Virus record (IMG/VR): IMGVR_UViG_3300024239_000013
Span: 248,001-312,000 of that record
Direction: 5' to 3' (one strand)
Length of the DNA stretch: 64,000 nucleotides
The number at the start of each line of letters is the position of its first letter. The first letter of the stretch is position 1. Shown in pieces: positions 24,503-62,202 of the stretch. The notes beneath the pieces were generated by a model. It was not told the origin of the DNA. It made no database searches and worked only from the letters and a program-made list of their open reading frames with translations. The position numbers and the translations under genes were made by a program.

Positions 24503-26239
24503 CTAATGAATTCCATATTTATAATTACCACAGTCCCATATTTTATAATATCCCATAGAATGCATAATATCATCAGCTTTTAAGTTTGGATCAAATCCAA
24601 GAGAAATCAATTTAGATTTTGTCCAGTTTAGTCGATTAGATTTTCTATCGTCAACAACCCAATAATATCCAGGAGTTGTTTTTCCGATATAAATAAATCC
24701 ACTTTTATAATAAGAAGTTTCTTTGTGATTGGGGGAGAAAGAAACATCGCAATAAGTAACTATAGATTTGGTAATATTATCTTTTATATACTTAATAATC
24801 CTAGAAACTCCACCAACTACAGTTGTATTAATAAGACTACAACTTCTGATTACCTCATATTCATATTTAGATTTTTTACTATCTATTAATTTTCTAGTTT
24901 TCGCTAAACTCATCAGAGAAACTAATACATTCTCGTAATATAATCCTATTATTATACTTGCTGGACAATATCCCTTGAGATGATTCTTCTGTGTAAAATG
25001 CTTATATTCACTTTTAGTGACCTGTTTTATTTCACACTTTCTGGCAAAAATTTTTCTTGAAATAGCACCAACTGCAGAAGATATCATAGACTTAACTATT
25101 TCTTTTTTATACCTCCAATCATCCTCCCATATATGATATAAACTAATACCTTTACTTGATAAAAATTCAGTTTTTTCTTGGTGATATTTAGAATTCTTAT
25201 ATATCTCAGAGTGCCAATAAAGTCCATTAAACTCAAAAGCAACGTTTATTTTTGGCAAATAGACGTCAACTTCAGAAAATTGTTTATTGTTTTTAAATAA
25301 ACTTCTATTATTAGATAATACCTCTCCAGGATATATTTCTTCTATATATTTTAGTAATTCCCTTTCCAAAACAGAAGATTTCATGTCTATTGGGTTACAA
25401 TATGGACATGGATCTATTCCATTTCTAAGTTTAGCATTTATAGTTGTTGAATGGAAACTAAAATCATGATTGCATCTTTCACAATTTAGATCAACCTTAG
25501 TTGTCGAATAACTAATCAATCCAATAGAATAAGAATCCAATTTACTAGAAAGTGTTTTTTGCTTAGTTATCGATGAAGACTCCGAAACTTTCTTAGCTAT
25601 TTCAGGATTTTTCATAGTATTCTCGTGTCCATACTTAAGAATATTGGTATTTCTTGACGACTCCGAATTAATAAAATCCAAGGTTCCATATTTTTCAATA
25701 CAGGTTTTAAGTCTTTTTTCAGAAATCTCCTTATTTTTTAAGGGAGAGTCTACACCATATTTTTCATTAAGGGTTTCCCTTATTTTTTCTTTTACTTCAT
25801 TGGATTTGAAATTATGATCAACCCCATATTTTGTTAACATAGTAGCTTCATATTTTTTTCTTTCTTCCGAACCTTTTTTGAAATACGAGTCTCCGTATTT
25901 TGACTTTATTGTATTTTTAAAACTATCGACTTTAATTTTTCTTTTACATTCAGAATTACCACATGTATTAAAGTAACCATCACTGAATCTATAGAATTTT
26001 TTAGGGTTTCCGCATATGCACTTTTCTACTAATTCCAAATTATTTATTATATGATATAATCTTTGTCCTATAGTAATGTCAAAATATACTTGATTTAGAA
26101 AATGTGTTACGTTCTCGATATCTGAAATTAATTCCTTATCGTTCCTTATTCTAGTGAATATGCCATTTAATGACATATTATTCGAAAGCTTATCGTTGAT
26201 GTCATTCGTTATTAATATCAGATTATTGCTAAGTTTCAT
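24503..26239 (-). mobile_element. free-standing homing endonuclease-like gene (KYG repeats, CxxC, PD-(D/E)xK/Vsr-like nuclease, GNAT/Mom-like C-terminus)
   Basis: EKYGV repeats, CERC/CPYC, EVDVYLP..AFEFNGLYWHS, HIWEDDW, ARKCEIK..YCD..IWDCG; sits downstream of the MCP terminator. Confidence 0.6.
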
Positions 26240-26276: not shown

Positions 26277-26311
26277 AAAAAAAAGCTTTAGTTTTCACTA
26301 AAGCTTTTTTT
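26277..26311 (-). terminator. intrinsic terminator after major capsid gene
   Basis: aaaaaaagctttag-ttttca-ctaaagcttttttt. Confidence 0.85.
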
Positions 26312-26329: not shown

Positions 26330-28042
26330 TTATGCTAGACCTCCTGCAGGTACATTAACAAAGAATGTTAAGTACATAGTTTCAGGTAACATACCAGCTT
26401 CAACTAGAGCGTATCTAGATTTAACTGCTATTTTAGGTGACATAGTACCTTCAGAGATTGTCTGAATTGACTCTGCCATCATATAAGGCATGAATTTAAG
26501 ACCTGGTTCGTCGTCTCCACCTTTTCTACCAACTAATACTCTAGTATCTCCGTAGCTCATGTTTTGATCTACATAAACAGTCATACCAGCAAGAGATCCT
26601 ACCGGATATAATGTACCGTTATTTTGAGTTAGAGTGTTAGAGAAAGGAGCAAAAGTGAATTGAGAGATGTCTTGAAGTGCACTTGCAACTGCAGCGTTTG
26701 TTACGATGAAGTTAGCTGGACCTCTTCTACCTCTGTTAGCTACTACGTTAGCAGCTGCAAGAATTCTAGAGAATAATCTTCTTTGTAAAGTTGATAAGTT
26801 CTCGTAAGAAGTTGATGCAGGACCTGCTGGAATAGCCATAGCTACACCTTGATCTGATTTATTAACGTAAGCTGCTGTTGTACCAGTAGATCCGTTAAGT
26901 ACTAAGTTTAAGTTCAAGTTTTGGTTTTCAACGTTGTTGAATTGAACGTGGTTAGACCAACCTAGAGCAAATGCTCTTGAAAGGATGTGCTTGTTAATTG
27001 CTTGAGAAACCTCGTTAACTAATGCATTCTCGATCATTGAAATAACGTCGATACCGAATTGTTTGTTAAGGTCTTGGATTTGCTCAGTTGTAACTGAAGC
27101 AGCAACTTGGAAAGTCTCAGCTTCTACGAACTTAGTGAAAGTAGAAAGACCCATTGAGTTATAGTAAGTAGATTCAGCTACTCCTCTTAACATTGGGTTA
27201 TAAGTTTTAGTACCATCAACATAAGGTCCTTGCCAATCAGCATCGTTATTGAAACCAGCACCAGAGAATCCTTGGATGTGATCTTCTAAAGCTTTAACTA
27301 ATTGAGCAACGTATCCGTTAACTGAAGTAGAAGTACCAGTGTACATACCGCTAGTACCAACTTGTACTGAAGTACCGTTGACGATAGAAGCTATTGTATA
27401 GTTTTGAGTAACTCCAGCAACCTCGAAAATTGGGAAACCGTCAATTCTTGAAAGTCCAACGAAAGTTAAAGTTAAAGTACCACCGTTAACTACAGTGTAA
27501 GAAGTTCCTACTGTAAAAGTACCAGCTGTAGCACCAGTAGCACCAGCAGCAGATCCTTGATAAACAGGGAATTTAATCATTGATGGAGCTTTTGCTAAAG
27601 CATCTGCAGCAGAAGCATCTGAGCCAGTAGCACCAGCTAATTTACCACCTGCATATACATAATCTAGATAAGATAAGATACCAGTTGGTCCTGACATAGG
27701 AATAACAGGAACGATATCAAACCCGATTGTTTTAGCAGCTACTTGAATAGCTAAAGGTAACAATGATGGGAATTTATCTCCTGAACCTTGCCAAGATGCG
27801 TTATAGAAACCAGCATTAGCACCAGTTGATAATCCACCTGCTCCTGGGAATGATGGAGGGGTTACGTTACCCATACCATTTACAACACCTAAAGAGTTAT
27901 ATGCACCCGCAGATTCGTTTAATGAGTGATAGTGACAATATTTAGTTAACCACTCTTTTTTGCTTGAGTCAGTGATTCCTGCTTTACTCTCGATGATAGG
28001 AGACCAGGTTTCATAGATTTCTTGTTCGTTAATCAATTTCAT
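26330..28042 (-). CDS. gp23: major capsid protein, T4 gp23-like
   Basis: DIVPVIPMSGPTG, TEQIQDL, EVSQAINK, RGPANFIV, FMPY, PKIAVKSRYAL; strong codon bias; SLNES processing site. Confidence 0.92.
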   Translation of the reverse strand: MKLINEQEIYETWSPIIESKAGITDSSKKEWLTKYCHYHSLNESAGAYNSLGVVNGMGNVTPPSFPGAGGLSTGANAGFYNASWQGSGDKFPSLLPLAIQVAAKTIGFDIVPVIPMSGPTGILSYLDYVYAGGKLAGATGSDASAADALAKAPSMIKFPVYQGSAAGATGATAGTFTVGTSYTVVNGGTLTLTFVGLSRIDGFPIFEVAGVTQNYTIASIVNGTSVQVGTSGMYTGTSTSVNGYVAQLVKALEDHIQGFSGAGFNNDADWQGPYVDGTKTYNPMLRGVAESTYYNSMGLSTFTKFVEAETFQVAASVTTEQIQDLNKQFGIDVISMIENALVNEVSQAINKHILSRAFALGWSNHVQFNNVENQNLNLNLVLNGSTGTTAAYVNKSDQGVAMAIPAGPASTSYENLSTLQRRLFSRILAAANVVANRGRRGPANFIVTNAAVASALQDISQFTFAPFSNTLTQNNGTLYPVGSLAGMTVYVDQNMSYGDTRVLVGRKGGDDEPGLKFMPYMMAESIQTISEGTMSPKIAVKSRYALVEAGMLPETMYLTFFVNVPAGGLA

Positions 28043-30085: not shown

Positions 30086-30093
30086 TATATATC
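30086..30093 (-). promoter_or_regulatory. late promoter of protease-capsid operon
   Basis: GATATATA 25 nt upstream of ATG 30060. Confidence 0.75.
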
Positions 30094-30128: not shown

Positions 30129-32711
30129 TTATTCATATTTTATTCTATCTTCAACTTCAGTCGTAAACTTTTTAGCTATTTGGAAAGCTTCACCGTCGGT
30201 CACTCTATATTTTCTAACTCTATCCCCAGGGGATGCAAATTTATTTTTAAGTTTAACTTCTACTATATCTCCTCTGTTATCCTGTAGTGCTTTTGCGAAA
30301 GATATTGCCTTCCATCCTTCTACGCCTAGAACTTCTTTTTCCTTATCTGATAAGAACTTATCTATTAAGTTTATTCCACCAGTTACTGAATTGTCTCTTA
30401 TTATCGTAGAACTTCTTCTATCCTTAATTTTAACATCATTTGGATCAACCTTGATATAATAATCATCAGAAACCTTACCTTCTACTTTATCACCAGAAAC
30501 TTCTGGTTTTTTTTCATCGGTTTTTGGATTTACTACTGTTACGATATCAGATTCTCTTCCGTCTTTTTTATTATCAAGTTTGGCTTTTTTAAATTGATAT
30601 ACACCTCTCTTAGGATTGTTTATATCCTCATTTATGGTATTTGTCTGAACCGAAATCGATTCACCTCTTTTGGCTCCATAGTCACTTGGATCTATAGTAA
30701 AGTTAGTGAATTTTCCAGTTTTATATTTTCTTAATTCTGGATCTGCGTATTCTCTATCAGTAACCCAATATATTGCGACTTTTGCTGGTGTTGATAAATC
30801 GGCTGAAGATAGACTAACAATATCTCCTGATTTTTTATCCTCATTTATACCATAAATTCTATCGCTAAACGAAGAGAAGCTTGTAATGACATCATTTTCA
30901 TTAACAAGGTCCATGTATACTAAGCCACCGTCTTCTGATTCATTCTTTTTAGAACCATTTCCTGAATCTTCTTTAACTTCCTTAGGTATAAATATTTTAT
31001 CGATGTCATCTTTAGAAGTTGATCTTAATTCGTCATTATTCATAAGTCTACCAACAACATTTATTATATCACCTTCATCGTTCTGATAATAAAATTCATA
31101 ATTTTCTGGTGCACTATCATCTGAAATTATAAGTTGATCTGAAGAACTGTCCAAAGCTGTTTTAAAAACATCCCAATCACACATACCCTTAAATTTAAAG
31201 ATAGTTGCTAATTTAGATATTCCGTCAACATAAGATATTTTAAAATCAAGGTCTTCGTTATCGAAAACTCTAGCTATAGTATTTAGAGCACCTTCTTGGT
31301 CATTAACAATGTCGTTATTGTCCAATGCAATTAAAACAAGATCATGTTCTGCAAGTTGTTTCTGTGCTTCTTTAGAATTTATCTGAGTTAATATAAGTAT
31401 GGAGTAATTGTTCTTATCCGCTATTTTAATAAATTCTGCTGTTGTTCTCGTTTCATTGTTAAAAAGGAAACTAGTAACAGTGCCCCATCCTCCTCCTGCT
31501 GGCTGAGACCAACAAACTGTAATAGGTACTCCGATTGGGATTTTTTTAGAATCCATTTCCCTCTGTGCAAATGATTTAACCTCATTATATTTTGGAGCTT
31601 GCTTATCACTAAACCAATTCCAAGCTGATCCTATTACGTCAGTTAAAATAAGTATTTCACCAACAAAAGGAATAAGTTTAGCTCCTCCTTGAGCTGCTCC
31701 TCTTGTAAATCCTTTAGAAAATGCTTTTAAAGCACCCTTTGCTCCAACCTTACCTAATGTATAAGCTGATTTTGCTCCCTTTGCTCCTCTAACTATCGAA
31801 GATCCAATAGTTCTGGTGTTTTTAAGTAAAGCAACATCTTTAGCTCCTCCCCATAGACTTTTTATAGCAGAACCACCATAATTTTTTATCTTATCCATTA
31901 CACCAGGGGGAACCTGAGTTGCATTTTTTGGATTTATTCTAAATCCCGATATACTCTTAAGTAAAAGTGCTCCAGATAATGCTCCACCCGCAGCTTTTAA
32001 TGCTCCAAAAAGAGTGATACTAACCCCACCCATTACTGCTAATATTGATGCATCTTGTATAATTTTTTGAGTAAGACCTTCAGCAGTTTCATTTTCTGGA
32101 ATTTGACCACCGGGATACATCTCATTAACATCAAGAAGCATTATCTTTGATGCAGATTGAGATTTAGTGAAAGATTTCATTTTTACCGCCTTTAAGGTTT
32201 CCTGTATATCTTCTCCAGTATCTGGATCATTTCCACAGATAAAAATTGCCTTTTCCTTTCCATCTAATATTTCACCAGGACTTAAAGTTTCGTCTATTTT
32301 ACCTTCACTCTTTAATTTATTGTAAGCAAAATGGAATTTTATGGCTTCCCTAAATTTAGGATCATCATCAGCAGTATTAGTATCTTCATTCAATTTAGAA
32401 AAATTAGAAAAAGAAATTACTCCGTTATCTAAATCGTTCTCATCTAACGAAACGTTTATATCGTCTAAATTAAAATTATATTTTTCCTTGATGTATTCTG
32501 CAACATTAGAATATTTACTCATATCTTCAGAATCAGCGACCCAAGATCTAGGATTTTTATCAAGCCATTTTTGAAAATCCTCAGATTTTGCCCACCATTG
32601 AAAATCTTCAAAAGATGCACTTTCTGCTCCTTTCATATCAAGGGGAACTGTTAAGAATGGGAAATCGTCTCCGTTTTTATATTCTGTTTTTTTAGGTAGT
32701 AGTATAATCAT
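30129..32711 (-). CDS. large putative head/ejection protein with Gly/Ala-rich hydrophobic segments
   Basis: Internal ISFSNFSKLNED and ITSFSSF..INED motifs; ASILAVMGGVSITLFGAL and LIPFVGEILIL segments. Confidence 0.45.
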   Translation of the reverse strand: MIILLPKKTEYKNGDDFPFLTVPLDMKGAESASFEDFQWWAKSEDFQKWLDKNPRSWVADSEDMSKYSNVAEYIKEKYNFNLDDINVSLDENDLDNGVISFSNFSKLNEDTNTADDDPKFREAIKFHFAYNKLKSEGKIDETLSPGEILDGKEKAIFICGNDPDTGEDIQETLKAVKMKSFTKSQSASKIMLLDVNEMYPGGQIPENETAEGLTQKIIQDASILAVMGGVSITLFGALKAAGGALSGALLLKSISGFRINPKNATQVPPGVMDKIKNYGGSAIKSLWGGAKDVALLKNTRTIGSSIVRGAKGAKSAYTLGKVGAKGALKAFSKGFTRGAAQGGAKLIPFVGEILILTDVIGSAWNWFSDKQAPKYNEVKSFAQREMDSKKIPIGVPITVCWSQPAGGGWGTVTSFLFNNETRTTAEFIKIADKNNYSILILTQINSKEAQKQLAEHDLVLIALDNNDIVNDQEGALNTIARVFDNEDLDFKISYVDGISKLATIFKFKGMCDWDVFKTALDSSSDQLIISDDSAPENYEFYYQNDEGDIINVVGRLMNNDELRSTSKDDIDKIFIPKEVKEDSGNGSKKNESEDGGLVYMDLVNENDVITSFSSFSDRIYGINEDKKSGDIVSLSSADLSTPAKVAIYWVTDREYADPELRKYKTGKFTNFTIDPSDYGAKRGESISVQTNTINEDINNPKRGVYQFKKAKLDNKKDGRESDIVTVVNPKTDEKKPEVSGDKVEGKVSDDYYIKVDPNDVKIKDRRSSTIIRDNSVTGGINLIDKFLSDKEKEVLGVEGWKAISFAKALQDNRGDIVEVKLKNKFASPGDRVRKYRVTDGEAFQIAKKFTTEVEDRIKYE

Positions 32712-32713
32712 TT

Positions 32714-33514
32714 CTATTTTTCTGTGTAAATTTTATCGTATGATTTTGAAATAATATTTATCAATTTTTCTATATATCCTTCATTTCTAAGCTTTTTAAA
32801 TGCTAGGTTTCCTATAGACATTTCTCCTCCTTTTTCTAACCCCTCTCTTCTCATTTTAAATATTTTTTTCTTCATCGTAAGACATCTCTTATAAAGTTGT
32901 CTAGCATTTGAAGGTATCATCGAGTCAACAAGAAGTCTTGAATGTAATTGTTCTATGTCAGAAACTATGGAATTATATTTCTTTTCAACATCTCTCTCGT
33001 CTATTGAAGGTGGATTATATGATGGAGATTTTATCCATTCATTTTTTAAAAGAGAAAAGAGAGCAGATGCTGTATGTGGTTCTGATTCGTCCTGTACGTA
33101 AAGTTCAACGTCATAACCTCTAATAACGATATCATGTCTAAGATTCCACATGAATCTAATCCCACCTATGGCTTTTTTTAGTATTTGAGGATTGTCATCA
33201 TCAATACCTTTAAGGTTAACTATAATATGAACGTCAAGATCAGAAAAATCTGTGTAGTTGTAATTTGATAAAGATCCAGTTAATTGTATATCAACAATAT
33301 CCTTTTGTTTTAATACATCTTCATAATTAGAAAAAAATTCATTGGCTATCCTAAGTAGCTTTCTTCTAACTCTCTGGTCAAATACCCATTTATCCTTCTT
33401 CTTAGTCCAAAAAACTGGAGCCAACTCATCATGGTAGAAAGAATTTACCTTTCCTTCATTTAATGAATTGCTTCTTTTATTTAAAAATCTATTAAACTCT
33501 AATAATCTATCCAC
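32714..33514 (-). CDS. Pol-beta superfamily nucleotidyltransferase with CTS-like leader
   Basis: TGSLSNYNYTDFSDLDVHI (GS..DxD) and VELYVQD; GTG start; MDRLLEFNRF..LNEG. Confidence 0.75.
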   Translation of the reverse strand: MDRLLEFNRFLNKRSNSLNEGKVNSFYHDELAPVFWTKKKDKWVFDQRVRRKLLRIANEFFSNYEDVLKQKDIVDIQLTGSLSNYNYTDFSDLDVHIIVNLKGIDDDNPQILKKAIGGIRFMWNLRHDIVIRGYDVELYVQDESEPHTASALFSLLKNEWIKSPSYNPPSIDERDVEKKYNSIVSDIEQLHSRLLVDSMIPSNARQLYKRCLTMKKKIFKMRREGLEKGGEMSIGNLAFKKLRNEGYIEKLINIISKSYDKIYTEK

Positions 33515-33519
33515 AAAAA

Positions 33520-33553
33520 AAAAGCTTTTCTCTATATATCGAGAAAAGCTTTT
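33520..33553 (-). terminator. terminator hairpin whose loop is the late promoter motif
   Basis: AAAAGCTTTTCTC-GATATATA-GAGAAAAGCTTTT then T-run on minus strand. Confidence 0.8.
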
Positions 33554-33572: not shown

Positions 33573-34274
33573 CTAGAAGCAGATTTTTTTCATGATAAGC
33601 ATTAATGTTCTAACGTCGGACTCACAATATCTTGATATCTTCAAGTGATCTTTGTCCAACCAATACGTTTCATTTACTTTGGATCCATCAAGATCTCCTT
33701 TAGGAGATTCTATATTTAGGGAGCAGGCTAATAAATCTAAGCTAAGATATTTTTGTTGAACCCAGCTACCAAATGAAAATATCTCAGAGGTATCAACATA
33801 AGGGATTTCCCATGGTTTTTTGTCCCATACTTGTAAATTTCCTGATGGATTTATTCCATTGAATATCATTCTTTTACCAAGACATGGAACATCAAATCCC
33901 TTAATATTATGACCACACAATTTCCAATTTTTGGCCATTGCATTATTGAATATCTTGTTGGTTTTGTTTAGTATATCAACCTCATCGTCACCATAAAAAG
34001 ATTTAAACGACATTTCACCATCCGCACTAAAAGATCCAAAACTAACACATACAACTTTTGAAAATTCGGGTTCTAGAGATCCTTTTTGTAAAAATATTTC
34101 ACTGTCAGATGCTTTTTCTAGCTCTATATTAGATCCTCTATAATAATTTGCTCTCTTAGTCCAAAGAAGAGCAAGTCTAGGATTTAAATATTCCATGGAT
34201 GAGTAGGATTCGTATGCGCATGCTGTCTCTACATCAAAATAAAGTAGATTTTGTATTACTTCTTTTTTAAACAT
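33573..34274 (-). CDS. PolB-related 3'-5' exonuclease (DEDD)
   Basis: YFDVET, GHNIKGFDVP, YCESDV. Confidence 0.8.
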   Translation of the reverse strand: MFKKEVIQNLLYFDVETACAYESYSSMEYLNPRLALLWTKRANYYRGSNIELEKASDSEIFLQKGSLEPEFSKVVCVSFGSFSADGEMSFKSFYGDDEVDILNKTNKIFNNAMAKNWKLCGHNIKGFDVPCLGKRMIFNGINPSGNLQVWDKKPWEIPYVDTSEIFSFGSWVQQKYLSLDLLACSLNIESPKGDLDGSKVNETYWLDKDHLKISRYCESDVRTLMLIMKKICF

Positions 34275-34291: not shown

Positions 34292-34299
34292 CAAATTTA
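34292..34299 (-). promoter_or_regulatory. Bacteroidota-type -7 element TAAATTTG (exonuclease)
   Basis: Matches TAnnTTTG; 17 nt before ATG. Confidence 0.55.
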
Positions 34300-34322: not shown

Positions 34323-35225
34323 TTATTTTTTTAAAATTTTATTTATTATAGTAGGAGGAAGAGCTTTATAGGTTTTCATATATTTAATATATGATAGTTC
34401 TCTTTTAGGTGAATCTATTATAACATCACAATCTAAACCAAAAGTAGGTATTCTTCTGCTTAAAAATTGTACTGGATTTGGTGAAATAGAAATTCCGTTT
34501 TCATTTATTTCCTCAGATTCGGAATGTATATAAAAAGGTTTTTGACCGGGTCTCCATGTGGAAGCAGCTAAGAATAGTGCTTCTCTTATCGAGAGTCCAC
34601 CGTCATTAAATTGATGAGGAAGAGATCTGAAACAAAGAGGAATTCCAGATTCATAATATATTCCAGAAAGAAGATCAGTGATTGAAAATAAACTTGGCTT
34701 ATCGTCATTTGTTACACATAACTTCTGTCTAGTTCTATCAGATAACAATGAAAGTCTCTCGCAAAACAATTTCATCGTTTGTTTTCTGTTGCCATAAGCA
34801 GATCCAATTCTAACTATTATAGATGGATAATTAATGCCGAGAAGGTCTAGTATAGAACTCAATCGGTTTAAAAATAATACACTATTTTCTTTTACCGATT
34901 CTATTTGACTTCCTAAGAAATGTTCCTTCCCTACAAAAAAACAAATCTTTAGAGAATTCTTGTTAATTAATGAATTTATAGAATTTATTCTTGACGATAT
35001 CTCAGGATCCTCTTCCTCTATAACATCCAGGAAAAAAGATTCATGAAAATCAATTTCACCAACATCTAAACAAACAATATTTGCATGGATCCGTGAATTT
35101 ATTACACAAACATCCAATATTAACGAAAGTATATCCTTATAAGAGGTTATTGTAAAGTCCCCCTTTATATGTTCTCTTGGAATTCCAAGATATGAAATAT
35201 TCGGTTGATTATTTCCAGATAACAT
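34323..35225 (-). CDS. uvsE: UV damage endonuclease UvsE-like (divergent)
   Basis: IGSAYGNRK, TNDDK, HQFNDG, AASTW..PFYIHSE. Confidence 0.6.
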   Translation of the reverse strand: MLSGNNQPNISYLGIPREHIKGDFTITSYKDILSLILDVCVINSRIHANIVCLDVGEIDFHESFFLDVIEEEDPEISSRINSINSLINKNSLKICFFVGKEHFLGSQIESVKENSVLFLNRLSSILDLLGINYPSIIVRIGSAYGNRKQTMKLFCERLSLLSDRTRQKLCVTNDDKPSLFSITDLLSGIYYESGIPLCFRSLPHQFNDGGLSIREALFLAASTWRPGQKPFYIHSESEEINENGISISPNPVQFLSRRIPTFGLDCDVIIDSPKRELSYIKYMKTYKALPPTIINKILKK

Positions 35226-36301: not shown

Positions 36302-36317
36302 TTTTTTATATATCCTT

Positions 36318-39389: not shown

Positions 39390-40721
39390 TTAAAATTTAT
39401 TAGAAAAGTCATCTGAAGTTGTCTTGTCGGATCTTATCTCTATAAATCTTGGTAAAAATAAAGATCTGTTTCCGTGTTTATCCTCTATAGTTACGTTATA
39501 TTGGACAGCAGCAATTTTTCCAATATGAGAATCTGGATCTTCACTTAGTGTTTTTAAATCATTGTCAGTAAATCCGGCTCCGACTTTAACATTAAGAGTC
39601 CCACTTGAATCTGTTAAGATAAATCCACCAATAAATCCTTCTCTCTTTCCCTCTCCTGGATACCATCCAGTTATAAGAAGATCGCAATCATTAACCTCTT
39701 TAAATTTTATCCAAGACTTAGATCTTTTACATTCATAAACAACATCAGCTTTACAAATAACTCCCTCCCCACCTTCATCGACAATCTTTTTATAAATAGA
39801 CGAAACTTCACTGGCATCTTTAAGCTCCCACATTTTAGCTAATTTAACCGGGGATTCTTCTGAAATCGAGGATAAAACTTTTTCTAACGTATCTCTTCTT
39901 ATTTTGTAATTAATAACTCCAGAGCCAGTATCTAGAGTAGATGCTTCCTCCAGATCAAAAATATTAAAAAGAAGTCCCTTTTCTATAGATGAATCAACTT
40001 TACCCTTAAGTATCTGAGTAACCTTGCCACTGACTGATTTTCTATTCAAATCCGTTAATTCGCCATCGAAAAACCAATCACCCTTCAATCCGCTATTTAT
40101 CATACACGTTTTAAGATCGAAAGTTATTTTAGGAAAACAAGAGGAATCAAGTTCATTAAATGCTCTAGTAAAGTAGGAAAATTCACCATTCTTATAAAGT
40201 GCTATTACTCTCACTCCATCATATTTCTCCTCACAATATACTTTTCCCCATTTTTCTATGTTATCGTGATCATCTGTTGCCAGCATAAGAGAAGGATCGG
40301 GGATTAATTCTCTCTTAAGTGCTTTATTGATAAGTTTTGCACCTATACCTATGTTCATTCTTTTGGTTAATATTTTCATAAGTACAGTTCTGAGTTCCAA
40401 ATCCTCAGCATCATCTTCAGATATTCTCTGTGAGATGATATTTTGAGCTCTACCTCTAAGTATATCGTTTGCTGCAGGGGCTTTTTTAAGCTCTTCTACA
40501 AGGGCTTTAAATTCATCCCAATGATTAGGATTACTTTCACTTAAAGATTCGTTAAAAGATATCTTATGAAGTTTTGTGGTAATAAATGGGTTATAACAGA
40601 CGTCTAGAATATAAGAGAATTTGTCTGTTAAGTTTTCTTCGATTAATTTTTGTTTTGCCTTTTGAGATCCCTCTCCTGTAAGATTTTCTAGATTTTTAAA
40701 AATTCTTAATTCTTGTATCAT
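39390..40721 (-). CDS. ATP-dependent DNA ligase
   Basis: EKYDGVR, FDGEL, EGVICK, KRSKSWIKFK, SLFLPRF. Confidence 0.92.
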   Translation of the reverse strand: MIQELRIFKNLENLTGEGSQKAKQKLIEENLTDKFSYILDVCYNPFITTKLHKISFNESLSESNPNHWDEFKALVEELKKAPAANDILRGRAQNIISQRISEDDAEDLELRTVLMKILTKRMNIGIGAKLINKALKRELIPDPSLMLATDDHDNIEKWGKVYCEEKYDGVRVIALYKNGEFSYFTRAFNELDSSCFPKITFDLKTCMINSGLKGDWFFDGELTDLNRKSVSGKVTQILKGKVDSSIEKGLLFNIFDLEEASTLDTGSGVINYKIRRDTLEKVLSSISEESPVKLAKMWELKDASEVSSIYKKIVDEGGEGVICKADVVYECKRSKSWIKFKEVNDCDLLITGWYPGEGKREGFIGGFILTDSSGTLNVKVGAGFTDNDLKTLSEDPDSHIGKIAAVQYNVTIEDKHGNRSLFLPRFIEIRSDKTTSDDFSNKF

Positions 40722-40738
40722 ATTGATTTATTTTTTCA

Positions 40739-40746
40739 CAAATATA
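40739..40746 (-). promoter_or_regulatory. Bacteroidota-type -7 element TATATTTG (ligase)
   Basis: Matches TAnnTTTG; 17 nt before ATG. Confidence 0.55.
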
Positions 40747-40770
40747 ATACAAAAATTCGAACTGAAAAAA

Positions 40771-41742
40771 TTATAAATTGAAATATTTACTATTATAGAC
40801 ATCTTCTATCCCGACCGAAACCGCACCTACACTAGAGCATGCGATAGATCCAGCTATATTACATAATTTTAAAGATTCTTTTATATCCAACCCAGAAGAA
40901 AAACATAAAGATATCATAGCGGTAACGGTATCACCAGCACCCGAAACGTCGGAAATTTTCACAGGATATGAAGGAGAGTGATATGATTCATTAGCAGTGA
41001 TGAAAATTACCCCATTTTCTGATAAGGTGACTAGTATAGATTCTATACCTAATTTAGATATAATATTCCTTCCCTCATAAACTATGGAATCGAAATCATT
41101 GGGACTCAATTTTTTATTGATTAAACTACAAAACTCTAAGAAATTGGGTTTAATCAAAGTACAACCGCTATATGAATCAAAATTTTTTAATTTAGGGTCT
41201 ACTAATACTGGCTTATTTTTTTCCTTGCAAATTTTTATAATTCCCTTTATAAGTACAGAGGTTAATAATCCTTTATTATAGTCCTCCATAATAACACAAT
41301 CATAAAAATCTATAACGGATTCTATTTTTGATAATATAATAGATTCTAAATTACTATCAATATCAATTATATCCTCATTATCAACTCTTAATAATTGATG
41401 AGAATTTGAAATGTATCTTGATTTAGTAGTTGTCTTTATTCCCGACCTTTTTATAAGAAGGCTGAGATCAGATTTTTCTGAAACCAAACTTTCTACCTTA
41501 TCTCCATTAAGATCATTTCCTATAACAGAAATAATATCGCTATATCCACCTAAAGAATGAATGTTTAGAAAAACATTACCTGCCCCTCCTAAATAGTAAT
41601 TTTCAGATTTATTTAATAATACCGGTACTGGAGCTTCTGGGGATATTCTAGATACGATTCCATTTACATAATGGTCTAGCATGATATCTCCAATGACCAA
41701 TATTTTAAGTCTGGAAAAAATATCCCTGATGTCTAGATTCAT
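40771..41742 (-). CDS. rfaE: heptose-7-phosphate kinase (RfaE/HldE kinase domain, PfkB family)
   Basis: GDIMLDHY..RISPEAPVPV, GGAGNV, DYNKG, VDPK, DVSGAGDT. Confidence 0.85.
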   Translation of the reverse strand: MNLDIRDIFSRLKILVIGDIMLDHYVNGIVSRISPEAPVPVLLNKSENYYLGGAGNVFLNIHSLGGYSDIISVIGNDLNGDKVESLVSEKSDLSLLIKRSGIKTTTKSRYISNSHQLLRVDNEDIIDIDSNLESIILSKIESVIDFYDCVIMEDYNKGLLTSVLIKGIIKICKEKNKPVLVDPKLKNFDSYSGCTLIKPNFLEFCSLINKKLSPNDFDSIVYEGRNIISKLGIESILVTLSENGVIFITANESYHSPSYPVKISDVSGAGDTVTAMISLCFSSGLDIKESLKLCNIAGSIACSSVGAVSVGIEDVYNSKYFNL

Positions 41743-41774
41743 TTGAGATTGAGTTTTTTAGAGATTATTTATTA

Positions 41775-43442
41775 TTATAGTGTCACTTCCGGAGTTTCTT
41801 CATCTGTTCCCCCTTCTGCTGGTGTTGTTCCCTCGGTCGGTGAAACTTCTTCACCAGTAGCGGATTCTGCTCCAGCTTCTCCTGATTCTGCTTCATTTTT
41901 TTTAGCAGCTTTAGCTTCCTTTTCTTTATAGATTTTATTCATTTTTATTTCGTCTGGATTCATTCCAAGAAATCTCTGGATTAAGAAATCATTATCGAAA
42001 TAAGATTTTTCCTCTTCTCCGACTTTAACTTTAAGTTCAGCTAATCCCTTAATAAATTCACTTCTTTTTGTAAATGACGTCATCTGTACAGATTCCTCAA
42101 ATTCATTATCTCTATAAAAATTTAAACCAAGATTTGATTTAAAGCTTTTATCTTTAGATAATTCAGGATGATCTAAGCACATCTGAATATAAAGAGGTTT
42201 TACTAGGATCTCCTGGAATATCGATCTAAGTCTTCTAAGGAATTTTTCAAATCTTATTTCGTCTCTTTCTAGCTGATCTATAGCTATTTGATAATTGGCA
42301 GGTGTTCCATTTTTAGAGGCAAATCTAGCATAAGGTATTTTAGAATCCATTTTAAGTTTATTGAAGAAAAATAAAACACTCTCCATCACATTAAAATCTG
42401 GTCCAGATGGGTTTAACGATTCTATCTGTGGGGACTGCCCATCTTTCTCGGGAAACAGATAATTCTTATAGAACTGAACTTTAGGTCTACCGTTAATCGT
42501 CAATTCTCCAGAAGCATCATTGATAGAAATATCCTCTTTATAGTTAGACATCAGTTGTCCCAATGTTTGCATAGCTTTTTGTGAAGATTGACTTCCTATA
42601 GGTATAATAAATTTAAGTCTATATGAAGCATTCATAACATTCCATATAACTCTGGAGTTTTCCATTATTCTTAGAATATTATAAGATCTCACCAATCTTT
42701 CTACGTAACTTACTCTTGAAATACTATTTCCCTTTGCATAAGAAATATAGATAACCTGTTCGTTAGTGAGTTTTCGGGTCATCTGTGGATTTTTTGGATA
42801 TTGTAGCCAAAATTGAACATATTCGCTTTCTCCAACCTTTTCAACTACAGGTTGCAAAGAAGCAGGATCTAATTCTTTAAATCCTATAATCTCTTTCCCC
42901 TTGTTATCATAAATTATTTCAAAAGCTAAAAACCCATCTATGAGAAACTGTCTAAAATACTGCCACCCCAAAACACTATTCTGAAATCCAAAAACATTAT
43001 ATATTCTATTATAATGTTTGAACATTTTTTCCTTCATTTTTTCCTTCAGATCCATGTTGATAAATGAGGGTTGTGCAAAATAATTTCTATCGTCGTAATT
43101 TATTGCCTCGTCACTAATAGTATCCAATATAAATTCTATCTCACCATTCAAAGAAAACTTTCTGAGATAATTTCTCTTATCGTTATAGTCTCTATCGAAA
43201 TATGCAATATATTTTCTTACCTTTGTATCCTGGTAAGAAGCTGTCCAATAAAAAGCATCATTTTGGGTAAATCCTGTTCCCTCTTGACTGGAGAAGAATC
43301 CCTCAGTTTTCCCAATGGCCTGTGAATTTCTCACAACCATATCGTCATACTGCATACCAAATTTTGATATATTCCCTAGATTTTTTAATATATTACCTAG
43401 TGCGGATTGGTTTGGTTTTAAATAATCTAAAAATCCTGCCAT
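41775..43442 (-). CDS. gp20: portal protein gp20-like, copy 2
   Basis: FRQFLIDG, SYVERL, KIPYARF, RDEIRFEKFLRRLRSIF. Confidence 0.85.
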   Translation of the reverse strand: MAGFLDYLKPNQSALGNILKNLGNISKFGMQYDDMVVRNSQAIGKTEGFFSSQEGTGFTQNDAFYWTASYQDTKVRKYIAYFDRDYNDKRNYLRKFSLNGEIEFILDTISDEAINYDDRNYFAQPSFINMDLKEKMKEKMFKHYNRIYNVFGFQNSVLGWQYFRQFLIDGFLAFEIIYDNKGKEIIGFKELDPASLQPVVEKVGESEYVQFWLQYPKNPQMTRKLTNEQVIYISYAKGNSISRVSYVERLVRSYNILRIMENSRVIWNVMNASYRLKFIIPIGSQSSQKAMQTLGQLMSNYKEDISINDASGELTINGRPKVQFYKNYLFPEKDGQSPQIESLNPSGPDFNVMESVLFFFNKLKMDSKIPYARFASKNGTPANYQIAIDQLERDEIRFEKFLRRLRSIFQEILVKPLYIQMCLDHPELSKDKSFKSNLGLNFYRDNEFEESVQMTSFTKRSEFIKGLAELKVKVGEEEKSYFDNDFLIQRFLGMNPDEIKMNKIYKEKEAKAAKKNEAESGEAGAESATGEEVSPTEGTTPAEGGTDEETPEVTL

Positions 43443-43446
43443 TTTA

Positions 43447-45036
43447 TTATAATGTTACTTCCGGGGTTTCTTCACCTTCACCCTTATTTTCGGCTTTCTT
43501 TTTTTCCCTTTCCTTTCTTTCTAAAGCTTCTTTATTTGCAACTATATCTTGTTTAGAAATACCTAAGTAGTTTTCTATAAGAAAAGCATTAGAAAAATAC
43601 GGTTCTTCATTATCTCCTAAAATTCCACTCATGGATAGAATTGCTTCTTTCTTCTTTTCTATTGTTGCTATTTCCTGATTTATTTTAAATGGATTATCAG
43701 AGAAATAATCTAAACCTAATTGGCTTTTAAATAAGAAATCATCTTCAAGATTAGGATATTTCTTAACCATTTGTATCCAAAGTGGTTTTATTAGAATCTC
43801 CTGGAAAGTAGATCTTAGTCTAGATATGAATTTTGAAAATCTTATTTCTTCCTTATCCAGTCCCTCTGCACCATTTGAATAAGGAGACGTACTTCCTCCA
43901 TCTGGATTATGAAACCTAGAAGGAGGTACTTTAGATTCTAATATAAACTTATCGAAAAAATAACTCAAAGGTTGAGGATCGTTTAAATTAGGACCCTCCG
44001 TATTTATAGGTTCTATAGTAGGTGTACCATTTACACCAGAAGGCATCAGATAGTTTTTGTAGAATTGTATCTTTGGTCTACCGTCTATTGTCAATTCACC
44101 ACTTTCATCATTAAGTTCTATATCCTCCTTATAAATGCTCATTAGTTCGCCTAGAGTTTGCATTCCTTTTTGCTGGGATTTAGATCCTATCGGAACTGTC
44201 ATTTTCAGCTTAAATGAAGCGTTCATAACGGACCAAATAACTCTAGTATATTCCATGATTCGTAGAATATTATAGGGTCTTATAAGTCTCTCTATATAGC
44301 TTATTCTTGATATAGCATTACCCTTCGCATAAGAAATATAAATTATCTGTGGATCATATAAAACTCTTTTTCTTTTAGGATCTTGTGGATATTGTGTCCA
44401 TGTATTTATAAAAGTCCCATCTATTTGTTTTTCTACACTAGGAACTAGGGTTACCGCATCTAATTCTTTAAATCCTATTATATTTTCTCCTCTATCATCA
44501 TAGATTATCTCAAATGCTAAGAAACCATCTATTATAAATTGTCTGAAATATTGCCAGGCTGTTATATCGTCCGAAAATCCCCAGATGTCATATAATTTTT
44601 TATATGATTCATAAAGTTCATCCTTTAATTTTTCATTTATATCAGTAATATCAATAAAGTCGGGATAAGCAAAGAAATTTGAAGGATCATAGGATATCGA
44701 CTCGTCACATATAGTATCTAGGACCCATTCAATCTCAGGATTAAGTGAGAATTTTCTTAAGAAATCTCTTTTCCCTTTATAGTCCTTATCGAAATATCCG
44801 ATAAACTGTTTAGTAGTTATATCCTGCTTTGCTAAAGTCCATAACATACTTTCGTCCTCCACGTTGGACTTATTCTTGTTTAAGAAGTTTGCTTCGGTTA
44901 CACCTACAGCCTGTGAATTTCTGATGACCATGTCATCATACTTCATACCAAAGGTACTTATCTTCCTAACAGAGTCTCGGATTCTCTGTATAACAGGAGT
45001 CTGTGATGGATTATTATTATCTACAAAGCCAGCCAT
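43447..45036 (-). CDS. gp20: portal protein gp20-like, copy 1
   Basis: FRQFIIDG, SYIERL, KVPPSRF, KEEIRFSKFISRLRSTF. Confidence 0.85.
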   Translation of the reverse strand: MAGFVDNNNPSQTPVIQRIRDSVRKISTFGMKYDDMVIRNSQAVGVTEANFLNKNKSNVEDESMLWTLAKQDITTKQFIGYFDKDYKGKRDFLRKFSLNPEIEWVLDTICDESISYDPSNFFAYPDFIDITDINEKLKDELYESYKKLYDIWGFSDDITAWQYFRQFIIDGFLAFEIIYDDRGENIIGFKELDAVTLVPSVEKQIDGTFINTWTQYPQDPKRKRVLYDPQIIYISYAKGNAISRISYIERLIRPYNILRIMEYTRVIWSVMNASFKLKMTVPIGSKSQQKGMQTLGELMSIYKEDIELNDESGELTIDGRPKIQFYKNYLMPSGVNGTPTIEPINTEGPNLNDPQPLSYFFDKFILESKVPPSRFHNPDGGSTSPYSNGAEGLDKEEIRFSKFISRLRSTFQEILIKPLWIQMVKKYPNLEDDFLFKSQLGLDYFSDNPFKINQEIATIEKKKEAILSMSGILGDNEEPYFSNAFLIENYLGISKQDIVANKEALERKEREKKKAENKGEGEETPEVTL

Positions 45037-45069
45037 TTAAATAATACTTTATTAATTTTATCGAATTTC

Positions 45070-45672
45070 TTAAATTAATTTCGATCTATATTCATTATAT
45101 ATCCCCTGTATGGATAACCCCTCTATCATATTAAAACTAAGATAAGGAATTTTTGGCCAATCCTCCATGGAAATAACCTTAACATTTTTTATGAATTTAT
45201 ATTTAAATCCAAAATAGGAATTTAAATATCCAGTACCTTTAAGAATATTCTTTAGCACAGGGTCCTTTAAATTCACTGGAACTTTGGTCGATCCTCTTTC
45301 GTATGAATTCTTATTAGCTAATAATTGTTCATAGAAATTATCATATATTCTTTCTATTATATCAACTCTTATTATATTCGGTACAGTTATTAAATCTATA
45401 CCTTTTATTACAGTTCCAGATTCTAATGTGTTGAAAACATCGGTACAAATAACAAGAGGCATTCGATCTACGAAAGGCCTTTTTTTGCTAATTTCAGAAT
45501 CCGTTAAATACCTAAAAGAGTAAATCTCTCCTGGGATGAATGGAGGAATGAAAGATATATCTGGTGAATCGTTCTTAAAATATTTACTTAAGAACAGATC
45601 ATTAGTTGAAGTGAATATGTTTCCCGAACTAGTTTCATCTTCTTTGTATTTAAGAACTAAATCTTTATACAT
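45070..45672 (-). CDS. DNA end protector gp2-like (tentative)
   Basis: PGEIYSFRY..DRMPLV pattern; adjacent to gp4. Confidence 0.5.
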   Translation of the reverse strand: MYKDLVLKYKEDETSSGNIFTSTNDLFLSKYFKNDSPDISFIPPFIPGEIYSFRYLTDSEISKKRPFVDRMPLVICTDVFNTLESGTVIKGIDLITVPNIIRVDIIERIYDNFYEQLLANKNSYERGSTKVPVNLKDPVLKNILKGTGYLNSYFGFKYKFIKNVKVISMEDWPKIPYLSFNMIEGLSIQGIYNEYRSKLI

Positions 45673-46157
45673 TATTTACTTTTAAATAGGAAATTTTCAT
45701 CAATAACACCAAATTTATAGCCCCTTTTTTCAGCCCATATTTTTGCAGCTTTGAATTTTGCTTGGTTTGTTATCCAGATCTGCATATTTCTATTATATGA
45801 TTTTAACTTTGCAACCGTCATCTTACCCTCATAAATTGGTTTTTTCGTTTGATTCTCTGGTTTTATTTCAATTATCCATTCTTGAGCATCTCCAGATTCC
45901 TTTACAACCTTGATATAAAAATCTACATTATATTTATGCTCTTTTTTATCTAATGGATTATAATACTCGATAGCAATTGGTTCGGAACTCCACTTTACTA
46001 TAGAATCATTTGTATCACAATACGTACAAAAACGATACTCCCAAGAGGATCTATATATGATGTTATGAATATCTCCTATATACTTTTCAGGATTTCTGGG
46101 TTCGTATTTACCGGATTTATATTCACCGTTTGGTTTTATCTTCTTTATATCAGGCAT
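45672..46157 (-). CDS. gp4: head completion nuclease, gp4-like (TnsA-like)
   Basis: GKYEPRNPEKYIGD, YRSSWE, WSSE, YNVDF, EIKP, NQAKFKAA. Confidence 0.85.
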   Translation of the reverse strand: MPDIKKIKPNGEYKSGKYEPRNPEKYIGDIHNIIYRSSWEYRFCTYCDTNDSIVKWSSEPIAIEYYNPLDKKEHKYNVDFYIKVVKESGDAQEWIIEIKPENQTKKPIYEGKMTVAKLKSYNRNMQIWITNQAKFKAAKIWAEKRGYKFGVIDENFLFKSK

Positions 46158-46163
46158 ATGGTA

Positions 46164-46523
46164 TTAAATATTATATGAATTATCATCACCAGTGATATAG
46201 CTAAATGGTATAGTTTTAGGATTTTTAGGGGGATGTAATTTTTTCCATCCCTTAGCAAATCCATTTTTAGCAATCTGTGTAAAATAAGCAAATGGATTAT
46301 TAGACTTTTCAGGATTGAATCGATTCCAATATTTACAGAGATCTTCCATAGCAAAGGCCATACAATCTTCTTTATCTTCTGGATCTTTATATGACATTTT
46401 CTTAGCTATACCGTTTATCATTAAGGTAAACATTTCTATAGTTTCCGGTGTCAGCTTACCGGCTTTCTTTGATTCTATTACAGCAAGCATAAGCTCACTA
46501 TTTTTAACATATTCTTTTGCCAT
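46164..46523 (-). CDS. gp55: late-transcription sigma factor, T4 gp55-like (short)
   Basis: YVKNSEL, FNPEKSNNPFAYFTQIAKN; start reassigned to ATG 46523 because the longer ORF crosses a terminator and promoter. Confidence 0.8.
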   Translation of the reverse strand: MAKEYVKNSELMLAVIESKKAGKLTPETIEMFTLMINGIAKKMSYKDPEDKEDCMAFAMEDLCKYWNRFNPEKSNNPFAYFTQIAKNGFAKGWKKLHPPKNPKTIPFSYITGDDNSYNI

Positions 46524-46549
46524 TAATTGTTTAATTAGTTTGGATTTAT

Positions 46550-46578
46550 ATTCTAGTATAAAAAATGGTAAATATTTC
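46550..46578 (-). promoter_or_regulatory. middle-type promoter GAAAT-N18-TAGAAT (late sigma gene)
   Basis: Between terminator and ATG 46523. Confidence 0.65.
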
Positions 46579-46580
46579 AT

Positions 46581-46617
46581 AAAAAAAGAATGTAGCTTTT
46601 TGGTTACATTCTTTTTT
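46581..46617 (-). terminator. intrinsic terminator
   Basis: aaaaaagaatgta ... tacattctttttt inverted repeat. Confidence 0.75.
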
Positions 46618-46775
46618 ATTTTTATTCCTTTCTTCTCCGGTTTCGTCTGCATCCGAATCGTCTTTTATTTCTTTTCCATCTGGTGCCTTACTTAATTTTC
46701 CTTCCGAAGATTGAACGAAGGGTTCACCCGGTTTATTTTGATCTTCCGATTTTGGAGCAAAATAAAAGTTACGAC

Positions 46776-56255: not shown

Positions 56256-56271
56256 ATTGTATATATTTATT

Positions 56272-62194: not shown

Positions 62195-62202
62195 TATATA
62201 TC
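62195..62202 (-). promoter_or_regulatory. late promoter of sheath gene
   Basis: GATATATA 29 nt upstream of ATG 62165. Confidence 0.75.

What the first reader, a model, noticed from the sequence alone, without database searches (positions are those of the whole stretch)
33515..33553. Terminator whose 8-nt loop is exactly the late promoter
A perfect 13-bp stem AAAAGCTTTTCTC/GAGAAAAGCTTTT encloses GATATATA, then a T-run and the GTG start. One 39-nt element would stop early exonuclease transcripts, sequester the leader on any read-through, and launch late transcription. This suggests premature NTase expression is harmful.
Basis: partly seen in the sequence, partly recalled or inferred. Interest (0 to 1): 0.6.

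Follow-up and report, generated by a model that had tools for sequence, protein, structure and literature searches.

The report
Late promoter nested in terminator hairpin
A conserved RNA hairpin between an exonuclease gene and a nucleotidyltransferase gene of a 319-kb uncultivated phage carries the phage's late-promoter box in its loop, so the downstream gene is probably expressed only from its own late transcript; phage T4 is known to use the same trick.

Summary
On the minus strand, 33553-33520 is a perfect 13-bp stem with the 8-nt loop GATATATA, followed by a run of nine T and the GTG start of a Pol-beta-type nucleotidyltransferase (NTase).

- **Promoter box:** GATATATA is the most enriched 8-mer upstream of genes in this genome (37 observed, 1.6 expected). 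It precedes the tail sheath and the prohead protease/capsid operon. A T4 gp55-like late sigma factor is encoded in the window.
- **Upstream gene:** the exonuclease has its own conserved host-type (Bacteroidota TAnnTTTG) promoter.
- **Conservation:** 48 of 49 distinct relatives keep a hairpin around the invariant GATATATA, next to a GTG or TTG start. At least eight unrelated stem sequences occur, and G.U pairs favour the sense RNA.
- **T-run:** only some lineages keep it, so blocking NTase expression from read-through RNA is the conserved role. Termination is an added feature of this lineage.

This matches the T4 e, soc, 49 and I-TevI mechanism, in which a late promoter sits inside an inhibitory hairpin. 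A homing endonuclease gene elsewhere in this genome has the same design. It is a new member of a known kind. No transcript ends could be mapped, and harm from early NTase expression is untested.

The parts
33541..33553 (-). 5' arm of the hairpin (AAAAGCTTTTCTC). It is present only on transcripts that start upstream.
   Evidence: The arm covaries with the 3' arm in relatives.
33533..33540 (-). Loop, GATATATA: the inferred gp55-type late promoter box.
   Evidence: It is the top enriched 8-mer upstream of genes, 37 observed against 1.56 expected. It lies 18 nt before the start, which is the modal spacing. It is invariant in all relatives.
33520..33532 (-). 3' arm (GAGAAAAGCTTTT). The inferred late transcription start, about 33528-33526, lies inside it, so late mRNA lacks the 5' arm.
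   Evidence: The start site is inferred. Five genes have their ATG 4-6 nt after the box, and no gene has it at 7-15 nt. In T4 the late box sits about one helical turn upstream of the start (PMC2988020).
33515..33523 (-). Run of nine T: four pair in the stem and five are free. This is the U-tract of an intrinsic-terminator-like site and the U-rich leader of the late mRNA.
   Evidence: The T-run is 5-9 long in all relatives with this stem type, but absent in other stem classes.
33512..33514 (-). GTG start codon of the NTase gene.
   Evidence: The start is GTG or TTG in all but one of the 46 tabulated relatives, whereas 90% of this genome's genes start with ATG.
32714..33514 (-). 266-aa Pol-beta-superfamily nucleotidyltransferase of unknown substrate: the guarded gene.
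   Evidence: It has a GS...DLD motif and matches phrog_36119. NTP_transf_2 hits 12 of 18 family members. Atlas clusters carry PF01909. Fold hits are CD-NTases, ANT enzymes and TENTs at low TM-score.
30129..32711 (-). 860-aa ORF 2 nt downstream of the NTase gene, probably co-transcribed. No family match.
   Evidence: Homologues follow the NTase gene in relatives.
33573..34274 (-). Upstream gene: DnaQ/PolB-type 3'-5' exonuclease. Its stop codon (TAG) at 33575-33573 leaves 19 nt before the hairpin.
   Evidence: Pfam DNA_pol_B_exo2 and phrog_25228. It lies immediately upstream of the NTase gene in every locus that has the hairpin and holds enough upstream DNA to tell.
34292..34299 (-). Host-type (Bacteroidota) -7 box TAAATTTG, 17 nt before the exonuclease ATG, with a T-rich tract upstream.
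   Evidence: An exact TAnnTTTG box is conserved in 15 of 21 distinct relatives, with near-matches in four of the other six.
46164..46652 (-). gp55-like late sigma factor, the likely reader of GATATATA.
   Evidence: phrog_234 at E = 5e-15 and 3e-14.
30086..30093 (-). GATATATA box before the prohead protease/major capsid operon (reference late promoter).
62195..62202 (-). GATATATA box before the tail sheath gene (reference late promoter).
26278..26311 (-). A-tract/stem/T-tract terminator after the capsid gene, of the same build as the hairpin in question (reference terminator).
   Evidence: It is also hit weakly by the covariance model R1.

Best explanation
The element marks the boundary between an earlier, host-RNA-polymerase-driven unit (the exonuclease gene) and the late head-gene region. 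It works like the T4 gene e / soc / 49 / I-TevI control.

1. Transcripts that start at the host-type promoter of the exonuclease gene carry both arms, so the 13-bp hairpin forms.
2. In this lineage the hairpin plus nine U probably terminates most of these transcripts.
3. On any transcript that reads through, the hairpin covers positions -39 to -6 in front of a weak GUG start. The mRNA has no Shine-Dalgarno sequence, so the NTase is not translated.
4. Late in infection, RNA polymerase carrying the phage gp55-like sigma factor recognises GATATATA in the loop region of the duplex DNA. It starts about 6 nt downstream, inside the 3' arm.
5. That mRNA has a leader of about 13 nt, no 5' arm and no terminator hairpin, so it is open for translation.

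Shown by sequence and comparison: the structure, its conservation and covariation, the promoter-like statistics of the box, the two promoter classes, and the sigma factor gene.
Inferred: the transcription start site, the timing, termination and translational block.
For: - **Structure:**
- **The box behaves like a promoter:** it is 24-fold enriched upstream of genes, with no other conserved element around it. Spacing to the start codon is either 4-6 nt or 16-31 nt. It stands before the sheath gene and the protease/capsid operon. A gp55 homologue is present. The T4 late promoter is an 8-bp box without a -35 element (PMC2988020).
- **Earlier promoter upstream:** a T-tract plus TAnnTTTG promoter class serves 24 genes, 15 of them in the first 80 kb. 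No gene has both promoter types. The exonuclease gene has one, conserved in relatives.
- **Conservation:** 48 of 49 distinct NTase upstream regions fold a hairpin around the box, using at least 8 unrelated stem sequences. In several, the 3' arm abuts or includes the GTG/TTG start.
- **Controls:** median folding energy is -15.5 kcal/mol, against -5.5 for 32 GATATATA promoter regions of the same genome, the finding's own among them. None of 9 other sites in the related loci is strongly structured.
- **RNA level, sense strand:** the sense hairpin is more stable than the antisense one in 31 of 45 cases. There are 37 G.U pairs, and the model scores 67 bits (sense) against 46 bits (antisense). Within the closest stem family, 98.6% of cells pair, 3 pairs change on both sides, and 0 of 500 shuffles reach the covariation score.
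- **Natural variant:** locus L031 lost the NTase gene and the 3' arm together.
- **Same design elsewhere in this genome:** a homing endonuclease gene has it, which is the very gene class guarded this way in T4 (PMC2988022; PMC3014915).
- **Host translation:** Bacteroidota lack Shine-Dalgarno sequences, and translation there is tuned by structure within -20..+20 (PMC6847099). This genome also lacks them.
Against: - No transcript 5' or 3' ends were obtained.
- In this window the start codon itself is not inside the main stem. Its predicted pairing to an upstream ACA is no better than with shuffled flanks.
- The relatives are phylogenetically related, so the counts overstate independence.
- Within the closest family, 9 of 12 stem pairs never vary.
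- A GATATATA box also stands 5 nt before the first ORF of the block upstream (36307-36314). Some upstream transcripts may therefore be late as well.
- No gp45 sliding-clamp homologue was found with phrog_223.
Confidence: 0.65

Rival explanations
1. Plain compaction. The hairpin is only the intrinsic terminator of the exonuclease gene, and the next gene's promoter happens to sit in its loop to save space. There is no translational role.
For: The hairpin has the same A-tract/stem/T-tract build as about 20 other intergenic terminators of this genome. The gap is 58 nt here, against 84-90 nt where a terminator and a promoter-like box lie in series. More distant NTase homologues have a terminator followed by a T4-like late box in series. 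Start-codon pairing is not significant here.
Against: Many relatives keep the hairpin around the box but have no T-run. There the 3' arm abuts or contains the start codon, which a terminator does not explain. The second case in this genome, the homing endonuclease, also lacks a T-run. The non-ATG start is conserved.
Confidence: 0.2
2. DNA-level control. The inverted repeat is an operator for a dimeric repressor, or a cruciform, that occludes or exposes the late promoter.
For: A perfect 13-bp inverted repeat flanks a promoter box. The outer 8 bp of the stem are invariant within the closest family. T4 I-TevI does repress its own late promoter through an overlapping operator (PMC2988022).
Against: Stem sequences are unrelated between lineages, while pairing is kept. 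G.U pairs, which are mismatches in DNA, occur 37 times and favour the sense RNA. No DNA-binding domain was found in the neighbouring genes.
Confidence: 0.06
3. The hairpin is an RNA site for a protein or a nuclease, for example a 3'-end stabiliser of the exonuclease mRNA, a processing site or a translational repressor target. GATATATA would then be an RNA motif rather than a promoter.
For: The loop is invariant and the stem covaries. T4 has RNA-binding translational repressors such as RegA (PMC3014915).
Against: The same 8-mer stands unstructured at a fixed distance before about 35 other genes, on both strands. Some have the ATG only 4-6 nt after it, which fits a promoter and not an RNA site. 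A matching late sigma factor is encoded.
Confidence: 0.07

Closest known systems
Phage T4 inhibitory leader hairpins with an internal late promoter (genes e, soc, 49, I-TevI/II/III, segB; Aeromonas phage Aeh1 mobE)
   Same: A late gene lies downstream of an earlier unit on the same strand. A hairpin forms only on upstream-initiated RNA. The 8-bp late box lies within the hairpin region, so late RNA lacks the 5' arm. A gp55-type sigma factor is present. The same genome also uses the design for a homing endonuclease (PMC3014915, PMC2988022).
   Different: The box is GATATATA, not TATAAATA (6 of 8 positions identical). The host type has no Shine-Dalgarno sequence to sequester. The start codon is GTG or TTG. 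In this lineage the hairpin is followed by nine U and looks like a terminator, and the guarded gene is an NTase. Nothing has been tested experimentally.
Intrinsic (Rho-independent) terminators
   Same: A stem-loop directly followed by a U-tract, placed 19 nt after the stop codon of the upstream gene, with the same build as the terminator after the capsid gene.
   Different: The loop is an invariant promoter box. The stem has only 4 G-C pairs. Relatives keep the hairpin without the U-tract.
T4 late promoters read by gp55/gp33/gp45
   Same: A single AT-rich 8-bp box with no conserved upstream element and an A-rich downstream region. It stands before virion genes, and a gp55 homologue is encoded (PMC2988020).
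   Different: The consensus differs at two positions. gp45 was sought (phrog_223) and not found; gp33 was not sought. Start sites are not mapped.
Phage N4 virion-RNAP hairpin promoters (from my own knowledge)
   Same: A promoter associated with a DNA hairpin.
   Different: Here the same box works, by inference, at about 35 sites without any hairpin. The hairpin is therefore not the recognition element.

Membership tests
T4-type late promoter inside an inhibitory leader hairpin | The guarded late gene lies downstream of an earlier transcription unit on the same strand. | tested here: met
   The exonuclease gene has a host-type TAnnTTTG promoter, conserved in 15 of 21 relatives, and the NTase gene follows on the same strand. 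Timing is inferred from promoter type only.
T4-type late promoter inside an inhibitory leader hairpin | The late promoter is placed so that late transcripts lack the 5' arm. | tested here: met
   The box is the loop, and the inferred start lies in the 3' arm. This geometry holds in 48 of 49 relatives. The start site is not mapped.
T4-type late promoter inside an inhibitory leader hairpin | [quoted passage not shown] | tested here: inconclusive
   In this window the 3' arm covers -18 to -6, and there is no Shine-Dalgarno sequence in this genome. GTG pairing is not above shuffled controls. In several relatives the 3' arm contains or abuts the start codon.
T4-type late promoter inside an inhibitory leader hairpin | Translation from upstream-initiated RNA is repressed, and this is relieved on late RNA. 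| not testable with these tools
   This needs reporter or ribosome-profiling data.
T4-type (gp55) late promoter | A single conserved 8-bp AT-rich box near -10, with no -35 element. | tested here: met
   Only the 8-mer carries information; the flanks are weak. Enrichment is 24-fold upstream of genes.
T4-type (gp55) late promoter | It drives virion (late) genes. | tested here: met
   It stands before the tail sheath gene and the prohead protease/capsid operon.
T4-type (gp55) late promoter | A gp55-family sigma factor is encoded. | tested here: met
   phrog_234, E = 5e-15, at window 46164-46652.
T4-type (gp55) late promoter | The consensus is TATAAATA. | tested here: not met
   The box is GATATATA, identical at 6 of 8 positions. 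It works like a T4 late promoter but has a different consensus.
Intrinsic terminator | A stable stem-loop immediately followed by a U-tract, downstream of a stop codon. | tested here: met
   A 13-bp stem, -16.2 kcal/mol, nine U, 19 nt after the exonuclease stop codon.
Intrinsic terminator | RNA 3' ends map at the U-tract. | not testable with these tools
   No reads could be laid.
Operator palindrome of a dimeric repressor | The half-site sequence is conserved across relatives. | tested here: not met
   At least 8 unrelated stem sequences occur with pairing kept.

The most novel reading that the evidence does not exclude
The 39-nt element is truly three things at once, in one hairpin: an efficient intrinsic terminator, a translational gate and a gp55-type promoter. 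It would be conserved across a whole clade of uncultivated large phages of Bacteroidota-like hosts because the NTase it guards is a dose- and timing-critical enzyme that harms the infection if made early. I know of no described terminator with a late promoter in its loop. It would also define a new late-promoter consensus for the gp55 family.
Probability: 0.2. Interest if true: 0.65.

Novelty: new member of a known kind. Interest (0 to 1): 0.45.

Why it matters
- It extends a classic T4 control principle, a late promoter hidden inside an inhibitory hairpin, to a distant clade of uncultivated 300-kb-class phages related to Lak-type megaphages. Their host type has no Shine-Dalgarno sequences.
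- It gives a testable late-promoter consensus (GATATATA) and a host-type early promoter consensus for these phages.
- It marks one conserved NTase family as a gene whose expression is kept strictly late and low in many T4-like lineages, which is a lead to its function.
- The element is compact and could serve as a model for combined terminator/promoter insulators.

Tried and rejected
- **Read evidence:** There are therefore no transcript ends. After I sent no query built from those places to any search tool and left the UvdE-like ORF 34323-35225 alone. Disclosures: the whole window was among the local targets of my own covariance-model scans. Whole-genome local scripts read through those places. 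The output printed the exonuclease upstream gap, which overlaps the first 8 nt of them.
- **Outer helix:** pairing of an upstream ACA with the UGU of the start codon appears in many minimum-energy folds, but is no better than with shuffled 5' regions. Dropped.
- **Rfam:** no family covers the hairpin.
- **DNA search of cultured phages:** no match.
- **Literature search for GATATATA as a phage promoter:** nothing relevant.
- **gp45 clamp family phrog_223:** no hit in the genome. The tool itself warns that this does not show absence.
- **Second 'box in loop' candidate:** genome 82069-82100 has an AT-only stem and only a roughly 19-codon ORF behind it. Not counted.
- **NTase homologues in LR756501 and Maribacter phage Molly_1:** no such hairpin.
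- **Fold search of the NTase:** only superfamily-level matches at TM 0.2-0.25, so no substrate is assigned.
- **MAFFT alignments A1 and A3:** they put the two arms out of register. I used an Infernal-based alignment instead.

Full report
**What the window is.** The window is bases 248001-312000 of a single 319,334-bp virus record with 31% G+C and about 88% of its ORFs on the minus strand. Its gp23-type major capsid protein (26330-28042) is 44-45% identical to those of uncultured huge phages and the Lak megaphages. More distant relatives are phages of Flavobacterium, Tenacibaculum and Chryseobacterium. Near-identical DNA occurs in subsurface, wastewater and river metagenomes.

**The observation.** It is exactly as described. 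The minus strand has a perfect 13-bp stem (33553-33541 with 33532-33520) and the 8-nt loop GATATATA (33540-33533). Nine T follow in a row: four close the stem and five are free. Then comes GTG at 33514-33512. GTG is the only possible start of the 266-aa ORF, because an in-frame TAG lies in the loop. The upstream ORF (33573-34274) is a DnaQ/PolB-type 3'-5' exonuclease.

The downstream ORF has a GS...DLD motif. NTP_transf_2 matches 12 of 18 family members, and the fold hits are all Pol-beta-superfamily NTases, at low TM-score. 'NTase' is therefore fair, but the substrate is unknown.

**Is the loop a promoter, and a late one?** GATATATA is the most enriched 8-mer in the 50 nt before ORF starts, with 37 observed against 1.56 expected. 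Only the 8-mer carries information, there is no upstream element, and the downstream region is A-rich. Spacing to the start codon falls into two groups: 4-6 nt (five genes) and 16-31 nt, with none at 7-15 nt and one outlier at 42 nt. This fits a start site about 6 nt after the box, giving leaderless or normally led mRNAs.

The box stands before the tail sheath gene and before the prohead protease/capsid operon, which ends in a terminator. The window encodes a homologue of the T4 late sigma factor gp55 (46164-46652, E = 5e-15). T4 late promoters are likewise a lone 8-bp box about one helical turn upstream of the start, with no -35 element (PMC2988020). I conclude by inference that GATATATA is this phage's gp55-type late promoter. 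It matches TATAAATA at 6 of 8 positions.

**A second promoter class.** A second class has a T-tract followed by the Bacteroidota -7 box TAnnTTTG. It precedes 24 genes, 15 of them in the first 80 kb, and never the same genes as GATATATA (box as cited in PMC6847099).

The exonuclease gene has one, with its -7 box at 34299-34292, 17 nt before the ATG. An exact box is conserved before the exonuclease gene in 15 of 21 distinct relatives, with near-matches in four of the other six. Host-polymerase transcripts of the exonuclease gene therefore run straight into the hairpin.

The genome has no Shine-Dalgarno signal: 12 of 227 genes carry one, below the random rate. Its leaders are 54% A. Both fit a Bacteroidota-type host.

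**Comparative evidence.** I fetched 28 viral contigs through the exonuclease and 92 loci through the NTase. Wherever enough upstream DNA is held, the NTase gene with this element directly follows the exonuclease gene (38-80% exonuclease identity). The start is GTG or TTG in all but one of the 46 tabulated sequences.

In 48 of 49 distinct sequences a hairpin brackets the box. The stems belong to at least eight unrelated sequence families: the AAAGCTTT type of this window, a GGGATTATTTG type, an AAGCCGTTT type, a CACCCTAGG type whose 3' arm ends in the GTG itself, a CTGGATAT type whose 5' arm includes half of the box and whose 3' arm abuts TTG, and others.

The controls argue against chance:
- Median folding energy is -15.5 kcal/mol, against -5.5 for 32 GATATATA promoter regions of the same genome, the finding's own among them.
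- None of nine other GATATATA sites in the related loci is strongly structured.
- Within the closest family an Infernal alignment gives 98.6% paired cells, three pairs with changes on both sides plus U.G intermediates, and 0 of 500 shuffles reaching the covariation score. However, 9 of 12 pairs never vary.

The sense-strand hairpin is more stable than the antisense one in 31 of 45 cases, there are 37 G.U pairs, and the model scores 67 bits (sense) against 46 bits (antisense). This points to RNA on the coding strand rather than a DNA operator. The sequences are related, so these counts are not independent events. The complete turnover of stem sequence is the strongest argument.

**What is conserved and what is not.** The T-run (5-9 T) is kept in the three stem families in which the stem ends 3-6 nt before GTG. 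It is absent where the 3' arm reaches the start codon. The common denominator is a hairpin that needs sequence upstream of the late start site and that sits on the translation initiation region. Termination looks like an additional solution used in this lineage.

The hairpin here has the same A-tract/stem/T-tract build as about 20 other intergenic terminators of this genome, including the one after the capsid gene.

In more distant marine NTase homologues the same parts lie in series: a strong terminator, then a T4-like TAAATA box, then GTG after 5 nt. One relative, L031, lost the NTase gene and the 3' arm together but kept the box for a different gene.

**A second case in the same genome.** The only other strongly bracketed GATATATA promoter, at -26.8 kcal/mol and without a T-run, precedes a homing endonuclease gene that lies just after a phage-encoded tmRNA gene.

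**Comparison with what is known.** In T4, genes e, soc, 49, I-TevI/II/III and segB, and mobE of phage Aeh1, are late genes on longer early or middle transcripts. [quoted passage not shown] A late promoter within the hairpin region yields RNA that lacks the 5' strand and is translated (PMC3014915; PMC2988022). The present element fits this kind in geometry, in the sigma factor, and even in its use for a homing endonuclease.

It differs in four ways:
- the consensus of the box;
- the absence of a Shine-Dalgarno sequence to hide (in Bacteroidota, structure within -20..+20 tunes initiation; PMC6847099);
- the conserved weak start codon in a U-rich, non-optimal context;
- the terminator-like U-tract.

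In the T4 reviews I read, terminators and inhibitory hairpins are separate elements, and I found no described case of a late promoter in a terminator loop.

**Limits.**
- No transcript ends could be obtained. I built no search query from those places afterwards; the disclosures are under 'tried and rejected'.
- Pairing of the GTG itself in this window is not supported.
- Whether early NTase expression is harmful is untested. The precedents (lysozyme, homing endonucleases) make it a reasonable guess only.

**Verdict.** This is a real, conserved regulatory element. It is best read as a T4-style gate with the late promoter in the hairpin, which in this lineage is also shaped as a terminator. It is a new member of a known kind, of moderate interest.

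Noticed in passing
genome 166683-167158 (L124 2184-2659, minus strand), outside the window: The phage encodes a tmRNA (Rfam RF00023, 78.8 bits, E = 3.5e-30). ARAGORN did not call it. A homing endonuclease gene (phrog_314) follows directly, behind its own hairpin-bracketed GATATATA box.
   Followed up: partly
whole genome; in the window before the ORFs starting at 34274, 40721 and 54669: There is a second promoter class: a T-rich tract, about 10-24 nt, then TAnnTTTG (the Bacteroidota -7 box). It precedes 24 genes, mostly in the first 80 kb, and never a gene that has GATATATA. This suggests host-polymerase early genes and a Bacteroidota-type host.
   Followed up: partly
window 36307-36314 with ATG at 36301; genome 53188, 77577, 83580, 194331: Five genes have their ATG only 4-6 nt after GATATATA, and no gene has it at 7-15 nt. 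These are probably leaderless late mRNAs.
   Followed up: partly
window 24503-26239 (minus strand): A 578-aa HNH homing endonuclease (phrog_3339, E = 6e-103) sits directly after the major capsid gene and its terminator. This recalls T4 segD between genes 23 and 24.
   Followed up: no
genome about 40,000-47,500 (plus strand), outside the window: About ten tandem paralogous genes, spaced roughly 700-960 bp apart, each carry a nearly identical upstream region containing GAAGTATA and AATGATCT. This is a repeated gene family in the plus-strand block.
   Followed up: no
L031 3723-3784: A natural variant: the 5' arm and GATATATA are kept, but the 3' arm and the NTase gene are replaced by a different gene. 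The junction lies right after the box, which suggests that module exchange happens at the promoter.
   Followed up: partly
L069, L075-L077, L081, L084, L086, L090, L094, L095, L097, L108: In marine NTase homologues (44-50% identity) a strong terminator is followed by a T4-like TAAATA box and, mostly exactly 5 nt later, a GTG. This may be a leaderless GUG start.
   Followed up: no
genome 82069-82100 (L125 570-601, plus strand): An AT-only 10-bp inverted repeat has GATATATA in its 12-nt loop, but only a roughly 19-codon ORF behind it. Its meaning is unclear.
   Followed up: partly
They overlap the 3' end of the UvdE-like ORF 34323-35225 and 8 nt of the gap before the exonuclease gene. I left them out of all later queries.
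   Followed up: no
window 56256-56443 and 46653-46775: Two unusually long 'intergenic' gaps (188 and 123 nt) look coding-like in composition and may hide short ORFs or mis-set starts. One lies just upstream of the gp55-like gene.
   Followed up: no
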